DNA of 64,000 nt from positions 186,001 through 250,000 of IMG/VR virus record IMGVR_UViG_3300047548_001236; one strand, 5' to 3'. Shown here piece by piece: positions 41,880-46,647 of this stretch. The position numbers and the translations under genes were made by a program. The notes beneath the pieces are model-generated. The model was not told where the DNA came from. It worked only from the letters and a program-made list of their open reading frames with translations, and did no database searches. The first letter of the stretch is position 1. The number at the start of each line of letters is the position of its first letter.

Positions 41880-43040
41880 TCATTCATCAGAAACCCTTTC
41901 GTCGATTCTCATCCTCGTAACTTGGATCTCTCCCGACTTGTTGATCATTTTCAGATCACCAGCGCGATATGAAACCTTAAACACGTCACGGCTTGCTCCA
42001 ACTCGTGAACGAGCCTGTTTTAGATCTTTGAAGACAAACAAGTACGGGCTATTTAGTTCCTCTGTCTCCTGACCAGGAACATACACGACCTTCTTTCCGT
42101 ACGTGTTATACAACCCTGGCCCGTATGTTCCGTTCCCGTTGTCTTTCAGAACCTTGTACCCGTAGAGGCGGAACTCAGGATCGTTTTCGTTCAACAGAGT
42201 GTAGTTTTTGGGTTTGGCTTCACCTAAAAAGCGTGTTGCCACCATAGTTTCAGTATCAACGAGGAAGTATTCGCCGTCAGCGTTGACAACAACCGTTTTG
42301 AGATCACGTGAGAAAAGATCCTCCAAGTATTCCCCAGTCGACATCTCCTCTGTGATTTCTTTATCACGTTCGTAGTAGGTGAACGATTCGATGTCCGCTA
42401 ATACCTCCAGCGCACGTTCCAGTGTGAATTGTTCATCTTCGACTCGGAGACTGATCTCACGACCGTATGTTCCACCAATTTGTGATTCCAGCTCCTGCCA
42501 AGATGTGGGCAGACCCTTATCAATGGCGGTCAGAATCATGCGGATGTGTTCGGGTTTACCAATATGGTATCCCTTTGCGGTGTATTTGGTCAACCTAAGA
42601 AGACTGTTTAACGGATATCGAGTATTGGGATTGAAACGAATTGTCTTGGATGCGATGTCAGGATAAAAGTCTGGATGAAAGGTATGTTCCTTAGTATCGC
42701 AATCGAACGCGCCCATGCAAACAGTGAAGTCGAAATGCTCGAAGATCTTCTCAGCAGTCTCAAAGGTATCGTACGTCATGACTTGGATAATGCCACGTTC
42801 ACCTTTGTCATTGGTGATGTCGTTTGATTTGAACGTGACAGCACGATCGGAGATGTTGACAACAAAACACCCATCTTCTTCAATCAGAGTGTAGAATGCG
42901 TCGATCATGGCCTTATCGGTCTTGGGATACACATCATAATCGTTCGTTTCAGTCTTCGTGGCTCGAGACAGAACAGCACCGCCAGCAATGAAACATCCTG
43001 GCAGGTTAACTTCATATCCTTTGGGCATTCTACTCATCAT
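41880..43040 (-). CDS. Pol-beta-type nucleotidyltransferase (CCA/poly(A) polymerase head-like)
   Basis: FIAGGAV...NDYDVY and FDFTVCMGA motifs. Confidence 0.7.
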   Translation of the reverse strand: MMSRMPKGYEVNLPGCFIAGGAVLSRATKTETNDYDVYPKTDKAMIDAFYTLIEEDGCFVVNISDRAVTFKSNDITNDKGERGIIQVMTYDTFETAEKIFEHFDFTVCMGAFDCDTKEHTFHPDFYPDIASKTIRFNPNTRYPLNSLLRLTKYTAKGYHIGKPEHIRMILTAIDKGLPTSWQELESQIGGTYGREISLRVEDEQFTLERALEVLADIESFTYYERDKEITEEMSTGEYLEDLFSRDLKTVVVNADGEYFLVDTETMVATRFLGEAKPKNYTLLNENDPEFRLYGYKVLKDNGNGTYGPGLYNTYGKKVVYVPGQETEELNSPYLFVFKDLKQARSRVGASRDVFKVSYRAGDLKMINKSGEIQVTRMRIDERVSDE

Positions 43041-43914
43041 GCATCTCCTGTTTTGTCTAACCAATCTTTCAACTTAATGTAGTCGCTTTCCACCATGTAG
43101 ATGCAATTACCCGACCTCACGGCCTGTCCTTCGAGCACCTCAAGGAATTGATCCGATCCATCTTCCTTATACAGTCGATGACCGCTGTGAACCACAATGA
43201 TGTCCGTTCCCGTAAATGTATTCATTCGACTAATCTCCAATCACGACTGTAGTTGTTGTGTAGCATTCAAAATCGATTCGCGTTTCAGATCCATCTGCAT
43301 TGACTCGGTAGAGTTGGACAACGTGGTCGCTCTCGATCAATTCCGCAATCTCTTCGCGGACAACATTGATATCGTCTGAATCTCTCGTTGGTACGGACGG
43401 TCCACCACCACCGTAGCCTTGTGCCTTAATTCTGTACATTGTGGTATTTCCTCTTGATTTCATTTTCGATTTCTACGGCCATGATATTTACAAGCTCGTG
43501 TTCGGGATTCAGACCCATAATAACCGAGAGATCGTGAATCAATTCGTTCGATGCATTGCTTTCCAACATCAGCTCCGCACCGTTGACTACTGTTGAGAAA
43601 TTATAGCTGATATCGTTCCAGGATTTTCCCTGCCGAATGCATTTAATGAAGTAGTCGACGCCATCAACAGTTACCGTGAAATCATCAAGAGTCATGCCAT
43701 ACATCTCCAGGAAAGTCAGCTACCAAACGTTCATGATCGTTGGGATCATCGAACACAAAATAATCCCAAGGCATGTCGTCTCCAGTGCATCGGTATGAGG
43801 ATGATTTGATCCAAGTGTAGAAACGTTTGTATTTCGGTCCAAAACCTCTACTTCTATAGTGCCTGATACCATCTTCACCGTCATACCAAAGGATGCCCAG
43901 GACGTCTGATTCGT

Positions 43915-44490
43915 TCACCATATCCGCAGCTCCTCGATATTGACTGGAGTGTAATCGACTACCTCAACGCAAACATTGCGATAAGGTCCAGGAGGCGATT
44001 CCATGCTATGAATATGTCCGTGAACATTGAGCAGTTGCTTGGAGAAGTCCACGCTACTGTAGAGACCGCTTTCGTGACGTGGATCGTGAGTTAGGATCAA
44101 GCCAAACTCAGGATACTTACGCCAGAACATCACTTTCTCAAATAGCCAGCGACCTTCTGAGTCTTTGCCAGAAAGATAACGAATGTCATCGTGGTTGCCA
44201 ACAATCAGTCGCTTGTGGCCATTGAACTTACGCCAATCAACCTCGAACTTCGCCCGATGTTCAGGTGTGCGGTCATAGAAAACGTCCCCGAGGTGGTAGA
44301 CGATGTCATTGGGTTTGACAACACTATTCCAGCCTTCGAGGATGCGTTCGTTCATTTCTTCAACAGAATTGAAGTCACGAACACGACGGCCCTTGAAATC
44401 GTAGAACGTCAGTATATCCGGTTGGTTGAACCCCGGCTAATAGTGTGTATCAGAAATAACCCAAATATCACGGGCTTTTCTCGTATACAC
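43915..44490 (-). pseudogene. calcineurin-like metallophosphoesterase with in-frame UAG (44437-44439); pseudogene or recoded
   Basis: GTG 44490: MYTRKARDIWVISDTHY*PGFNQPDIL..., in frame with HLGDV, GNHD, LTH and HGHIH motifs. Confidence 0.75.
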
Positions 44491-44494
44491 ACTA

Positions 44495-44908
44495 TTAGAC
44501 CTCCTTTCTCCTAGACCATCTCTCTCCATTTTCGTACCCTTCTATATTTTTCAACGTGTCTTTTTGTTCAGGCCAATAATACGTAGTGTGCCTTATTTTG
44601 TGAAACAACTCATCTAGTGTTATAACATCATCTTGTTTTTTAGCTGATATGGAACAGTTTTTTGAATGGGTAATTATGTTACAGTTCTCGACATGGTATA
44701 ATATGTTAGGAAACACCCCAAGACGAAACCCACTGTTACGAGAAAACGTGTGGTCACGTACTACACCGGTTGGGTTAGATTTCGCGTTGAATACCCCGAT
44801 TTCGTTTATAACGGGGAACGACTCGACCATCAAATCAAACATACGGTATTTCCAGTCCGATTCAACGAAATAAATTTGATAGTCTGTTTTTTCCGAAAGA
44901 GGCAGCAT
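44495..44908 (-). mobile_element. HNH-type homing endonuclease (possibly N-truncated) inserted in the phosphoesterase locus
   Basis: RDHTFSR..GF..GV.P.IL.H..NC.II.H..N HNH pattern; AT-rich relative to neighbours. Confidence 0.65.
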
Positions 44909-44912
44909 TGTA

Positions 44913-44948
44913 ATGGGTGTCAGATATCACCCACATGTCTCTACTCAT
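44913..44948 (-). other. duplicated 5' fragment of the phosphoesterase gene (MSRDMWVISDTH)
   Basis: ATG 44948 overlaps the upstream gene end; encodes the WVISDTH metal-binding motif I. Confidence 0.75.
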
Positions 44949-45318
44949 CAGACACCTTCTTTCGTACAAACGACAATTTCTTACGGTCGATGTGGAAACT
45001 GAAATCGTTAGCCCACCGATCGCGTACTCTCTCGAGTGCGTTAGCGATTGATACGAACGCGCTGCGTTGCATCTCGTTTTTGGTCAGCTTCGATCCCTCT
45101 TCAAGAATAGCAATCTCGTCATTGAATGCTTTCAACAGCTTCGCTTCAAACGACGCAATGAACGCAATCTGTGCTTCGACCGCTTCCAGACGTTGGGTCA
45201 GCTTTTCAATCACTTCGTCTCTCGGATCGGGTTTAACCTCCGGTTTTTCATCAACCGGAGGAGGGAGCTGAGTTAGCAGCTTCTTTGAGATTGGAACTTC
45301 TTTAACCTCTGCCATCAC
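44941..45318 (-). CDS. coiled-coil hypothetical protein
   Basis: ORF track. Confidence 0.6.
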   Translation of the reverse strand: MMAEVKEVPISKKLLTQLPPPVDEKPEVKPDPRDEVIEKLTQRLEAVEAQIAFIASFEAKLLKAFNDEIAILEEGSKLTKNEMQRSAFVSIANALERVRDRWANDFSFHIDRKKLSFVRKKVSDE

Positions 45319-45508
45319 ATGAGGAACCCTTCTTTCTGAACAGCTTTCTTTTCCAGGTCAGACAGACAAACGAACTTTGCAGTGAACTTACCATCAGCAA
45401 GTTTGACAGTGGTATATTCCACATACTTCAACTGCGTCTGGTTGATCTTACGAATCAGCGAGGACAGCGTTTGATACGATTTCATTGTCGGTCTCCTTGT
45501 CTACCTCT

Positions 45509-45540: not shown

Positions 45541-46647
45541 TCAGTTCTTTAGCAACGTGATTTTATCTGATGCACGGGTGATCGCAGTATACAACCAACG
45601 TTGCCATACATCTCTAAAACACCACGACTCATCGTAGATCAACACATTATCCCACTGACTACCTTGACTTTTGTGGCACGTGATAGCGTATCCATAGTCA
45701 AACTCTTGCGACCCTTTCAGCGTTTTCCAGTCAGGTTTAGCAGCGTCACTAACAAAGAAGCTCTTGTGGACCTTGACTTTAACAGGCAACTCATTAGTAC
45801 CATCATCACGATCCAATGTGTAATGGAAAAAGTTGGTCTTGTACTTCTGTTGGTTAATGCTCCAGATCGTAAACATTCCACCGTTGAAGATGCCCAAGTC
45901 ATGGTCATTCTTCAAACAGATTAACCGATCCCCTACAACAGGAGCGTCTGGATCCAGTTTCAACAGCTTACGGACTTTGCGATTGAGGTCATCTCTTGTT
46001 ACGTTTCGCCCGACAAGAATTTGACTCGCATTCAAAGCGTCTTGAGATGAGATCTTGCTAACGACACGACTTTCACCATAATCACCGAAATCGGGATATG
46101 TTCCGTTTCGGACTTGCGTTGCAAGATACACGATCGGGTTATCTTCTGCTTGACGGTGAATCTCTGTCAGCATCACATCAGGCTTTGCATCCGTGAAGAA
46201 ACCAGCACCTGAGACGGGAGGAAGTTGTGCAGGATCGCCGAGCACGAGAATTGGTTTTCGGAATGAAAGTAGATCCTTCGCCATTTTTTCGTCGACCATT
46301 GAACATTCGTCAATAATCAGCAAGGCAGCATCTTTCAAAATGCTACCATTCCGATTGAGACGGAATGTCACTTCGCCGGTTTTGTCATCGACATCTGCAA
46401 TATAGATCAAGCTATGGATTGTACGTGCTCCGACACATCCATTCTTTTGCATGACAAGCGCAGCTTTGCCTGTGAAAGCTGCATACAGAACATCACCATC
46501 GATTGTCTCAGCGAAATGCCTCGCGAGAGTCGACTTGCCCGTCCCTGCATACCCAAACACACGGAAGATTTGCTTCTTCTTGGATTCTTGATAGAACCAC
46601 TTATCGACAGCCTTCAAGGCTGCTTCTTGTTGGGGTGACCATTTCAT
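45541..46647 (-). CDS. dda: Dda/RecD-like SF1B DNA helicase
   Basis: GYAGTGKS, AFTGKAA, TIHSLIY, DECSM, GDPAQLPPV, HRQA, AITCHKSQGS, YTAITRA. Confidence 0.9.
   Translation of the reverse strand: MKWSPQQEAALKAVDKWFYQESKKKQIFRVFGYAGTGKSTLARHFAETIDGDVLYAAFTGKAALVMQKNGCVGARTIHSLIYIADVDDKTGEVTFRLNRNGSILKDAALLIIDECSMVDEKMAKDLLSFRKPILVLGDPAQLPPVSGAGFFTDAKPDVMLTEIHRQAEDNPIVYLATQVRNGTYPDFGDYGESRVVSKISSQDALNASQILVGRNVTRDDLNRKVRKLLKLDPDAPVVGDRLICLKNDHDLGIFNGGMFTIWSINQQKYKTNFFHYTLDRDDGTNELPVKVKVHKSFFVSDAAKPDWKTLKGSQEFDYGYAITCHKSQGSQWDNVLIYDESWCFRDVWQRWLYTAITRASDKITLLKN

What the first reader, a model, noticed from the sequence alone, without database searches (positions are those of the whole stretch)
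44435..44501. Long hairpin burying the second start codon and the UAG
Seen: a perfect 14-bp inverted repeat (44437-44450 / 44485-44498) continues inward with AGAAA/UUUCU and AGCCCG/UGGGUU. The stem holds the HNH stop codon, the GTG start and the internal UAG, and abuts the SD. Inference: only ribosomes finishing the HNH ORF could open it (coupling or a recoding signal). Alternatively a template-switch event created the insert by extending the palindrome.
Basis: partly seen in the sequence, partly recalled or inferred. Interest (0 to 1): 0.6.

Follow-up and report, generated by a model that had tools for sequence, protein, structure and literature searches.

The report
Hairpin of a mobile ribosome-hop cassette
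The hairpin is real and is a conserved part of a mobile homing-endonuclease cassette inserted in a jumbo phage's phosphatase gene; relatives suggest it helps ribosomes skip a stop-led gap, which would be a second large natural family of translational bypassing after phage T4 gene 60.

Summary
Observation confirmed: a 26-nt-arm hairpin with 14 perfect outer pairs, -34.9 kcal/mol, z -5.6, on the minus-strand RNA. It holds the UAA of the upstream ORF, a GUG start and an in-frame UAG.

It is the 3' end of a ~480-nt mobile cassette (window 44428-44907) inserted 14 codons into a metallophosphatase gene of a 283-kb phage. A relative (L001) has the gene uninterrupted. Another phage (L043) carries the cassette at 99.2% identity amid 72-87% flanks.

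The 'HNH ORF' is a 5'-truncated remnant of a 299-aa NUMOD3/HNH-like endonuclease. The cassette supplies SD, GUG and a recoded copy of the lost N-terminus, then UAG CCG GGG UUC.

Across 79 unique junctions, this endonuclease family always sits in the 5' end of such phosphatase genes. About 55 are interrupted at S-D-x-H-F-G, typically as codon X, stop, 0-20 nt, same or synonymous codon X'. Two types carry the T4 gene 60 take-off stem-loop core.

The hairpin occurs with stop-type gaps (median z -4.4, n=38), not in uninterrupted genes (z +0.2, n=23), and it covaries.

Best reading: a driver stem for short translational bypassing. The window's own site lacks a cognate landing codon and is in frame, and the phage encodes tRNA(CUA), so suppression remains possible here.

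The parts
44862..44948 (-). Orphan native 5' end of the metallophosphatase gene (ATG 44946-44948; MSRDMWVISDTHYN then out-of-gene residues and TGA). The native part runs to about 44908.
   Evidence: Matches the uninterrupted gene of L001 39/40 nt up to ...CATTACAA.
44428..44907 (-). Mobile cassette (deletion derivative): endonuclease remnant plus recoding module.
   Evidence: Absent from L001. Only 4 differences in 477 nt against L043, while the flanks are 72-87% identical and the first flank difference is at 44419. Other runs hold the cassette at 95-99% with flanks at 77-85%.
44904..44907 (-). Deletion junction: relatives have 531 more nt here (N-terminal 162 aa of the endonuclease plus its SD).
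   Evidence: read laying joint in X3 and loose end in X4; L043 sequence; P0002 is 299 aa against the window's 137 aa.
44495..44908 (-). Remnant ORF (137 aa), the C-terminal nuclease half of a NUMOD3/HNH-like homing endonuclease.
   Evidence: 99% identical to residues 163-299 of P0002. Family of 78 proteins. Invariant D-H...N...N. Weak fold matches to HNH domains. No Pfam HNH hit.
44500..44505 (-). Shine-Dalgarno AGGAGG for the cassette-borne start; its last GG can pair with CC 44435-44436.
   Evidence: Sequence; MFE structure; same arrangement (GGCUAA with UUAGCC) in L047 and L049.
44440..44490 (-). Cassette-borne start (GUG 44488-44490) and recoded copy of the lost N-terminus (VYTRKARDIWVISDTHY). 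UAU 44440-44442 is the putative take-off codon.
   Evidence: Encodes the same RD(I/M)WVISDTHY as the native copy, with most differences at third codon positions. This copy is inherited with the cassette in L046, L047, L049, L050, L112 and L121.
44435..44501 (-). The hairpin: 5' arm 44485-44498, 3' arm 44437-44450, inner helices 44471-44481 with 44452-44463, loop 44464-44470.
   Evidence: conservation and covariation.
44428..44439 (-). Stop-led gap UAG CCG GGG UUC (12 nt, in frame). Skipping it restores the native DTHY|NQPDIL; reading it through adds X-P-G-F.
   Evidence: Alignment with L001; junction census. UUC stands where the native gene has UAC.
43915..44427 (-). Body of the calcineurin-like metallophosphatase, native sequence from AAC CAA (N-Q-P-D-I-L...).
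   Evidence: Pfam PF00149 2e-9 and PHROG 547 1.6e-37. 85% aa identity to L001. 91 of 125 differences against L043 are at third codon positions.

Best explanation
The hairpin is the conserved RNA stem of the recoding module at the 3' end of a mobile homing-endonuclease cassette.

Shown: the cassette sits 14 codons into a phage metallophosphatase gene. It cuts off the native start and supplies a new SD, a GUG and a recoded copy of the lost N-terminus. That copy ends in a sense codon followed at once by a stop and a few extra bases, after which the native gene continues. The same design, at the same spot, occurs in dozens of diverged cassettes. The hairpin accompanies the stop-led gaps and covaries.

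Inferred: the extra bases break the endonuclease's DNA target, giving self-immunity as in T4 mobA/gene 60. The protein is rescued at translation. When the ribosome stalls with the take-off codon in the P site and the stop in the A site, the 5' arm is already outside the ribosome. Zipping of the stem drags the 3' arm (take-off codon and stop) out through the mRNA exit, so the peptidyl-tRNA slides forward a few bases, re-pairs and translation resumes.

In this window the hop would be 12 nt, from UAU to UUC, which is not a cognate codon. It would give exactly the native DTHY-NQPDIL. Because the gap is in frame and the phage encodes a tRNA(CUA), amber suppression (adding X-P-G-F) may act beside or instead of the hop here.
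For: Insertion and mobility:
- L001 has the uninterrupted gene.
- Window against L043: the cassette is 99.2% identical with sharply bounded 72-87% flanks. Other runs show the same contrast.

Family-wide design:
- Almost every endonuclease locus with enough 3' sequence has the phosphatase right downstream.
- Orphan native 5' ends lie upstream of the endonuclease in all eight loci read by eye.
- In the census of 79 unique junctions, about 55 are interrupted inside S-D-x-H-F-G.
- Every insert that is not a 1-nt slip starts with a stop codon, in all but L060 (CAU G CAU) directly behind the take-off codon.
- Most inserts are flanked by identical or synonymous codons: CAU UAG C CAU; CAU UGA C CAC; ACU UA ACU; CUU UGA CUC; CAG UGA CAA; AUC UAG CGAGG AUC; UUC UGA A UUU.
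- Each skip restores the D-x-H-F-x-H motif. Plain readthrough would break D-x-H in the in-frame cases and cannot work in the +1 and +2 cases.
- L054/L055 and L064 carry GGU UAG CCUUCGGGCUAA. Its core is the T4 gene 60 take-off stem-loop (GGA UAG CCUUCGGGCUA).

Intact bodies:
- The gene bodies stay open in one frame over about 140 codons in the interrupted genes.
- L047 and L049 share the junction, while the endonuclease (71% aa) and the body (74% aa, catalytic motifs intact) have diverged alike.

Hairpin:
- Stop/hop class: median dG -23.4, z -4.4 (n=38).
- Uninterrupted: dG -9.8, z +0.2 (n=23); Mann-Whitney p 1.6e-9.
- UUU-slip class: z -0.15.
- Columns of the 3' arm are paired in 32-37 of 38 loci, with 2-5 Watson-Crick pair types each.
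- In the closest 8 cassettes, 97.9% of cells are paired, 5 of 12 pairs have changes on both sides, 0 of 500 shuffles reach the covariation score, and slid controls pair in 20-59% of cells.

Literature: pairing of mRNA leaving the ribosome is proposed as the forward driver of gene 60 bypassing (10.1101/2024.12.09.627546).
Against: - No expression or protein data: nothing shows that a single polypeptide is made.
- The window's own site is the least convincing of the family. Its landing codon UUC mismatches tRNA-Tyr at the middle base, there is no gene-60-type take-off stem-loop, and the gap is in frame.
- The phage has a tRNA(CUA), so suppression could do the job without any hop.
- Matched flanking codons could partly reflect target duplication at insertion: 14-16 nt direct repeats flank the cassette in L050 and L071.
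- Loci are not phylogenetically independent, and I assigned the classes myself.
- Partners come from per-sequence MFE folds, which favours pairing.
- The geometry (stop at the 3' end of the stem) differs from every tested gene 60 element.
- A -35 kcal/mol stem over the start codon should also depress initiation.
Confidence: 0.62

Rival explanations
1. Amber suppression plus gating. In this phage the UAG is simply read by the phage's own tRNA(CUA), giving a phosphatase with four extra residues. The hairpin only hides the GUG start, so the gene is translated when ribosomes finishing the endonuclease ORF, or other events, open it (coupling or timing).
For: - tRNA with anticodon CUA at genome 21238-21313.
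- The gap is in frame only in the window/L043 lineage among its closest relatives.
- There is no cognate landing codon.
- TAG ends only 16 of 271 well-scoring ORFs, as expected if readthrough is costly.
- The UAA of the upstream ORF and the GUG lie in the 5' arm.
Against: - There is no genome-wide sign of in-frame TAG use.
- The suppressor's anticodon stem has two mismatches.
- The closest relatives of the cassette (L046, L047, L049, L050, L112, L121) have the body in the +1 frame, where suppression cannot work, yet keep the same hairpin.
- Uninterrupted loci with the same gene order lack the hairpin.
- The endonuclease ORF in the window is a remnant without an SD.
Confidence: 0.2
2. Dead gene. 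The endonuclease insertion, or sloppy repair of its cuts, has inactivated a dispensable phosphatase. The stop-led inserts are scars that merely destroy the target site. The hairpin is a terminator, an RNA end-protector or a relic.
For: - The cassette spread recently in this lineage (99% identity), so the intact body is uninformative here.
- The endonuclease is already decaying in the window.
- Gene callers annotate only the 146-aa internal ORF.
- Direct repeats at the junctions could arise at insertion.
Against: - About 55 interrupted genes each have a single interruption at the same few codons and an otherwise open, conserved body.
- L047 and L049 have co-diverged with motifs intact.
- Every non-slip insert begins with a stop (chance about 3/64 each), and most have matched codons.
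- The recoded N-terminal copy keeps its amino acids across cassettes whose endonucleases are 46-66% identical to the window's.
- There is no U-run after the stem, so it is not an intrinsic terminator.
- The hairpin covaries.
Confidence: 0.12
3. Mutational palindrome. A template switch or snap-back during break repair made the inverted repeat, and it has no function.
For: The 5' half of the stem is close to the reverse complement of the codons W-V-I-S-D-T-H-Y-stop. Breaks made by the endonuclease would give the opportunity.
Against: The stem exists in cassettes with different arm sequences and keeps pairing through changes on both sides. It is specific to one class of junction. A single recent accident cannot explain this.
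Confidence: 0.03

Closest known systems
Phage T4 mobA / gene 60 cassette (50-nt translational bypass; Bonocora et al. 2011 from my own knowledge; Manning & Atkins 2022, bioRxiv 10.1101/2022.08.31.505936)
   Same: - An HNH-type homing endonuclease and a non-coding gap travel as one mobile element that splits a host gene.
- The cassette gives the downstream part a new start and N-terminal extension.
- The gap begins with a stop directly after the take-off codon.
- In most relatives the take-off and landing codons match.
- The element decays progressively, endonuclease first.
- L054/L055/L064 even share the UAGCCUUCGGGCUA stem-loop core.
   Different: - The target gene is a metallophosphatase, not Topo II; Manning & Atkins found MobA elements only in Topo2L.
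- The endonuclease family differs: tblastn against the phage collection, which holds T4, returned no T4 record, and there is no direct comparison with full-length MobA.
- The gaps are very short (1-26 nt, 12 here) instead of 50.
- The new N-terminus is a recoded duplicate of the lost one rather than a novel tail, and only one polypeptide is needed.
- The conserved structure is a hairpin upstream whose 3' arm ends at the take-off codon and stop. It is not a stem-loop that starts there.
- The window lacks a cognate landing codon.
Low-level 'stop hopping' and +5/+6 hops in E. coli (Weiss et al. 1987, from my own knowledge; referred to in 10.1101/2024.12.09.627546)
   Same: A peptidyl-tRNA leaves a codon next to a stop and re-pairs with a like codon a few bases on, as in CUU UGA CUC or ACU UA ACU.
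   Different: Those were inefficient events in reporters without stimulators. Here they would be natural, recurrent, gene-restoring sites with a conserved stimulatory hairpin.
prfB (RF2) +1 frameshift site CUU UGA C with upstream SD-like stimulator (my own knowledge)
   Same: There is a stop in the A site and slippage of the P-site tRNA. L071 even reads CUU UGA CUA, and the UUU-C-GGN class looks like classic +1 slippage on a hungry CGG codon.
   Different: In L071 and the like, the +1 frame is closed and the body is in frame, so a 6-nt hop is needed rather than +1. The window's site has no slippery re-pairing.
Byps in Magnusiomyces mitochondria (Lang et al. 2014, my own knowledge)
   Same: Many short mobile inserts lie inside coding regions, with matched take-off and landing codons and hairpins, and are bypassed at translation.
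   Different: Those are 27-55 nt, mitochondrial and not tied to an endonuclease gene. They have no cassette-borne start or duplicated N-terminus.
MobE-split nrdA of phage Aeh1 (cited)
   Same: A homing endonuclease is inserted inside an ORF without an intron or intein, and function is kept by added termini.
   Different: There two polypeptides assemble. Here the N-terminal piece is replaced by a copy carried in the cassette.

Membership tests
Programmed translational bypassing cassette (T4 gene 60 kind) | Two parts of one protein's coding sequence separated by a non-coding gap | tested here: met
   Alignment with the uninterrupted L001 gene: 12 extra nt between ...THY and NQPDIL. About 55 relatives have gaps of 1-26 nt at the same place.
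Programmed translational bypassing cassette (T4 gene 60 kind) | Stop (or hungry) codon immediately 3' of the take-off codon | tested here: met
   UAU UAG in the window. All non-slip inserts in relatives start with UAG, UGA or UAA; in all but L060 (CAU G CAU) the stop follows the take-off codon directly.
Programmed translational bypassing cassette (T4 gene 60 kind) | Landing codon matched to the take-off codon | tested here: not met
   Window: UAU to UUC, a mismatch at the middle base. The only cognate UAU/UAC downstream are out of frame or would delete conserved NQPDILTF. The feature is met in most relatives.
Programmed translational bypassing cassette (T4 gene 60 kind) | Take-off stem-loop beginning at the take-off codon or stop (tetraloop-capped) | tested here: not met
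   There is none after the UAG in the window. It is present in L054/L055/L064, with the same core as T4. The window instead has an upstream hairpin ending at the UAG.
Programmed translational bypassing cassette (T4 gene 60 kind) | Nascent-peptide signal, and a single polypeptide shown experimentally | not testable with these tools
   No proteomic or reporter data. The nascent chain is only 17 residues at take-off.
Programmed translational bypassing cassette (T4 gene 60 kind) | Linked to a homing endonuclease as one mobile element | tested here: met
   Presence/absence polymorphism and a 99.2% identical cassette in 72-87% flanks. The same linkage holds in 98 loci.
HNH homing endonuclease | beta-beta-alpha-metal motif (H-N-H / H-N-N) recognised by sequence profile | tested here: inconclusive
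   No Pfam HNH hit and no PDB profile hit. However, D214-H215, N237 and N246 are invariant in 29 sequences.
HNH homing endonuclease | HNH fold | tested here: inconclusive
   AF2 model pLDDT 88. The best matches for residues 180-275 are HNH domains (BrxU, Cas9, ScoMcrA), but only at Z 2-3.5 and Foldseek E 0.2-3.
HNH homing endonuclease | DNA-binding modules typical of phage homing endonucleases (NUMOD) | tested here: met
   NUMOD3 PF07460 is recorded for many members and passes the cut-off in P0021 (26.2 bits). It is below the cut-off in P0002. This part is deleted in the window.
Stop-codon reassignment / natural amber suppression | Suppressor tRNA in the genome | tested here: met
   ARAGORN finds tRNA(CUA), 76 nt, CCA-encoded, with a weak anticodon stem.
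Stop-codon reassignment / natural amber suppression | In-frame TAG in many genes | tested here: not met
   TAG is not enriched between long same-frame ORFs. Only 2 of 16 TAG-ended good ORFs continue in frame.
Group I intron with endonuclease ORF | Ribozyme core | tested here: not met
   No Rfam match at E<=1 in 43500-45500. Only about 70 nt lie outside the ORF, and a cassette-borne start and duplicated N-terminus would be pointless in an intron.
Start-codon-sequestering hairpin for translational coupling | Start codon in the stem, upstream ORF's stop inside the stem, and the structure present wherever the gene pair is coupled | tested here: inconclusive
   The first two points are met. The third is not: 23 uninterrupted loci with the same endonuclease-phosphatase order have no such hairpin.
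Calcineurin-like metallophosphoesterase (host gene) | Profile match and D-x-H, GD, GNH(D/E) motifs | tested here: met
   PF00149 2e-9; PHROG 547; own HMM 8e-60. D-T-H is supplied only by the cassette-borne or the orphan N-terminus.

The most novel reading that the evidence does not exclude
A large, so far undescribed family of homing-endonuclease cassettes in freshwater and wastewater phages carries natural short-range translational bypass sites: hops of 4-26 nt and +1 slips at one spot of a metallophosphatase gene. An upstream 'driver' hairpin ends at the take-off codon. The window holds a decaying member whose 12-nt gap is crossed without a cognate landing codon. This would be a second broad natural family of programmed bypassing in phages. 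It would also be a ready-made natural mutant series for the exit-side mRNA-pairing model.
Probability: 0.55. Interest if true: 0.92.

Novelty: new variant of a known kind. Interest (0 to 1): 0.85.

Why it matters
Programmed translational bypassing has rested on essentially one system, T4 gene 60. Its 2022 survey still called that cassette unique and confined to topoisomerase genes.

Here the same evolutionary logic reappears in another gene with another endonuclease family: an endonuclease protects its own insertion by breaking its DNA target with extra bases that ribosomes then ignore. It comes in dozens of natural variants that differ in gap length, stop codon, take-off codon and frame.

The hairpin geometry is exactly what the 'pairing of exiting mRNA drives the ribosome forward' model predicts: the 5' arm is free behind the ribosome and the 3' arm holds the take-off codon. 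That makes the model directly testable with short natural sequences.

There are two practical consequences. These genes are mis-annotated as truncated ORFs. And stop-led micro-gaps next to homing endonucleases deserve a systematic search.

Tried and rejected
- megablast of the locus against 50,697 phage records: no match. tblastn finds only distant phosphatases (at most 53%) and C-terminal endonuclease fragments in jumbo phages, so there is no cultured carrier.
- Rfam on 43500-45500: nothing relevant. Group I intron rejected.
- The 137-aa ORF as query found only itself, because relatives are 270-310 aa. The cluster look-up gave the 299-aa member that opened the family.
- TAG=Q was named once as a device for a family scan. 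The genome does not show TAG reassignment, and no conclusion rests on that translation. Later searches used the body alone.
- No hop-joined (spliced) protein was built or sent to any tool. The joined products are described in words only.
- I looked for a cognate UAU/UAC landing site in the window. The candidates are out of frame or would delete conserved residues.
- I looked for +1/-1 frameshift at UAU UAG. The shifted frames are closed.
- Reinitiation at the internal ATG 44355 was rejected. That Met is a conserved internal residue (EEMNE), and the product would lack D-x-H.
- The genome search on L043's record, to ask whether it also has tRNA(CUA): the record is not held.
- The PDB profile search was blank and genome contigs uninformative.
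- The script machine was lost. The census of orphan 5' ends upstream of the endonuclease was therefore done by eye in eight loci only.
- Read laying showed contigs only, so there is no information on RNA ends or expression.
Full report
**1. The observation**

All genes in this part of the window are on the minus strand.

- The inverted repeat is real. Its arms are 44437-44462 and 44473-44498 (26 nt, 81% complementary), and the outer 14 bp are perfect.
- As RNA, 44425-44515(-) folds at -34.9 kcal/mol. Shuffles give -18.1 +/- 3.0, so z is -5.6, and 0 of 200 shuffles fold as well.
- The 5' arm holds the UAA of the upstream ORF (44495-44497) and a GUG (44488-44490).
- The 3' arm ends in UAU UAG (44437-44442).
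- AGGAGG (44500-44505) lies just outside the stem.
- Rfam finds nothing relevant.

**2. What the locus is**

The frame that starts at GUG reads VYTRKARDIWVISDTHY, then UAG, then PGFNQPDIL... It continues as a calcineurin-like metallophosphatase (PF00149; PHROG 547).

A second copy of MSRDMWVISDTHYN lies 470 nt upstream (44948-44908), followed by unrelated residues. The two copies differ mainly at third codon positions.

An IMG/VR relative (L001, 85% aa) has the gene in one piece, MSRDIWVISDTHYNQPDILTF.... Aligned to it, the window's upstream copy is the native 5' end, up to ...CATTACAA. The native sequence resumes at AAC CAA CCG (44427 downwards).

So 44428-44907 is an insert. It consists of the 'HNH' ORF, an SD, a GUG, a recoded copy of the lost N-terminus and 12 extra bases, UAG CCG GGG UUC.

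**3. The insert is a mobile element, and the ORF is a remnant**

- The 137-aa ORF found only itself in the protein index, but its cluster holds a 299-aa member, P0002.
- P0002's locus, L043, lies on an independent 297-kb contig. It has the same insertion with 531 more bases at 44904/44907. These encode an N-terminal Cys-rich/NUMOD3 part and the ORF's own SD.
- Window against L043: there are 4 differences in 477 nt of cassette, and none between 44428 and 44538. The flanks are 72-87% identical, and the first flank difference comes 9 nt beyond the junction.
- Contigs of other public runs show the same contrast, and the same extra 531 nt.
- The full-length protein has 78 relatives of 190-316 aa, many recorded with NUMOD3.
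- D-H...N...N is invariant.
- An AF2 model (pLDDT 88) gives only weak matches, but they are consistently to HNH domains. Pfam HNH and PDB profiles are blank.
- I therefore call it an HNH-like homing endonuclease, with the fold unproven.

**4. The genome**

The window lies in a single 282,855-bp contig with 51 tRNA genes. One of them is a tRNA(CUA).

TAG is not reassigned:
- It is not enriched between long same-frame ORFs.
- It ends only 16 of 271 well-scoring ORFs, and 2 of those continue in frame.

**5. The family**

With an alignment of the endonucleases (A2) I fetched 61 loci from IMG/VR and 80 from JGI metagenomes.

*Layout.* A phosphatase HMM built from uninterrupted genes hits right downstream of almost every endonuclease with enough sequence. 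In the eight loci read by eye, the orphan native 5' end lies upstream of the endonuclease. In L050 and L071, 14-16 nt of target are repeated at both junctions.

*Junction census.* Of 79 unique junctions, about 24 are uninterrupted and about 55 are interrupted. The interruption always falls within the codons S-D-x-H-F-G. The classes are:

| Skip | Examples |
|---|---|
| in frame, +6 or +9 | UCA UGA UCG; CUU UGA CUC/CUA/CUU; CAG UGA CAA; CAA UGA CAA; CCG UGA CCG; CUU UAG UGA CUU |
| +5 | ACU UA ACU, ACU UG ACU, ACU UA ACC/ACA |
| +7 | CAU UAG C CAU; CAU UGA C CAC; UUC UGA A UUU |
| +8 | CUU UGAGA CUU |
| +11 | AUC UAG CGAGG AUC |
| +7/+10, landing on UAU (a G.U pair for tRNA-His) | L046, L061, L121, L150 |
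| +4 | CAU G CAU |
| +1 on UUU-C/U, often before CGG | 16 types |
| +22 / +26 | GGU UAG CCUUCGGGCUAA...GGU/GGA |

*What the skips do.* The core of the last class is that of the T4 gene 60 take-off stem-loop. Each skip restores the D-x-H-F-x-H motif. Readthrough would break D-x-H in the in-frame cases and is impossible in the shifted ones.

*Bodies.* The gene bodies are open in one frame over about 140 codons. L047 and L049 share one junction, while the endonuclease (71% aa) and the body (74% aa, motifs intact) have diverged alike. This argues that interrupted genes stay under selection.

**6. The hairpin in the family**

- A stem whose 5' arm holds the start codon, and whose 3' arm ends at the take-off codon or stop, recurs with different sequences.
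- I folded 90 nt ending 9 nt after the Asp codon:

| Class | n | Median dG | Median z |
|---|---|---|---|
| stop/hop | 38 | -23.4 | -4.4 |
| UUU-slip | 16 | -15.4 | -0.15 |
| uninterrupted | 23 | -9.8 | +0.2 |

- Stop/hop against uninterrupted gives p = 1.6e-9.
- Anchored on the Asp codon, columns -8 to -1 are paired in 32-37 of 38 loci, with two to five pair types each.
- On a MAFFT alignment of the eight closest cassettes (A3), 97.9% of cells pair and five of twelve pairs change on both sides. No shuffle of 500 reaches the covariation score, and slid partners pair in 20-59% of cells.
- The conserved UAGCC is explained as well: it pairs with GGCUA(A) at the SD and endonuclease-stop region.

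**7. Mechanism**

*Shown:* the mobile cassette; the cassette-borne start and duplicate N-terminus; stop-led gaps at one spot; a hairpin specific to them, with covariation.

*Inferred:*
- The gap breaks the endonuclease's target, as in mobA/gene 60, and the protein is restored by a short translational hop.
- At take-off the 5' arm is 43-56 nt upstream of the P-site codon and free. The inner helix has just left the ribosome.
- Zipping of the outer stem would pull the take-off codon and stop out through the exit. This is the driver proposed for gene 60.

In the window the hop would be 12 nt, UAU to UUC. UUC stands where the native gene has UAC, so the landing codon is one base from cognate.

Because the gap is in frame here and the phage has a tRNA(CUA), suppression (adding X-P-G-F after an intact D-T-H-Y) is a live alternative or partner. 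I cannot separate the two computationally.

Coupling to the endonuclease ORF may add to this in full-length cassettes. It cannot be the conserved reason for the stem, since uninterrupted loci lack it.

**8. Rivals**

- *Dead gene or repair scars.* Against this: the stops at the start of every insert, the matched codons, the single interruption per gene, the co-divergence and the covariation.
- *Template-switch palindrome.* Contradicted by covariation.
- *Intron.* There is no ribozyme and no room for one.

**9. Known or new**

The held literature has no report of bypassing in phosphatase genes or with this endonuclease family. The 2022 survey found the gene 60 cassette only in Topo2L and called it unique. 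No cultured phage in the collection carries a full-length member.

I class it as a new variant of a known kind. The window's copy is a decaying and atypical member.

**10. Limits**

- There is no expression or protein evidence.
- I assigned the classes by hand.
- The loci are related to one another.
- Script access was lost.
- One early scan used TAG=Q as a device, and nothing rests on it.

Noticed in passing
genome C1:21238-21313 (outside the window; L044:239-314, minus strand): Amber-suppressor-type tRNA (anticodon CUA, 76 nt, CCA encoded, discriminator G). Its anticodon loop CUCUAAA resembles a tRNA-Trp loop with one change, and its anticodon stem has two mismatches. The amino-acid identity is unknown.
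   Followed up: partly
genome C1:18681-18757 (L045): ARAGORN calls a tRNA with an 8-nt anticodon loop and four-base anticodon UGCA (Ala/Cys ambiguous). It is a possible frameshift-suppressor-like tRNA or a mis-call, in a phage that may use recoding.
   Followed up: no
whole genome (282,855 bp, one contig; window = 186001-250000): Jumbo phage with 51 tRNA genes in two clusters (12-42 kb and 67-69 kb). TAG ends only 16 of 271 well-scoring ORFs. Runs holding the DNA are freshwater, sediment and wastewater metagenomes.
   Followed up: partly
genome C1:28651-28890 (+), inside the tRNA cluster: A second, distant copy (32% aa over 83 residues) of the nuclease half of the same endonuclease family.
   Followed up: no
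L054, L055, L115, L116 and L064, L134 (junction about 40 nt after the endonuclease stop): Phosphatase genes with GGU UAG CCUUCGGGCUAA...GGU/GGA. This is a 22-26 nt gap whose stem-loop core is the same as the T4 gene 60 take-off stem-loop, but in a different gene and with a different endonuclease.
   Followed up: partly
L068/L069/L147 (junction region): The start-codon frame needs a shift in a run of seven U (the hairpin loop) as well as the CUU UGA CUC hop to reach the gene body. Either two recoding events are needed, or there is a homopolymer error.
   Followed up: no
window 41880-43064 (-), 394-aa ORF two genes downstream: Its homologue in L043 (400 aa) is recorded with PF26128 (Gad2), a family named after an anti-Gabija protein. 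This is a possible anti-defence gene next to the cassette.
   Followed up: no
L051-L053, L056/L117, L063, L129, L145, L159: A recurrent UUU C GG(N) one-base insert puts a CGG codon in the A site after UUU. It looks like classic hungry-codon +1 slippage and comes without the hairpin.
   Followed up: partly
window 45541-46647 (-): Dda-like/RecD-like helicase (PHROG 325, 1e-109), syntenic in L001 and L043. The neighbourhood is a DNA-metabolism module.
   Followed up: no
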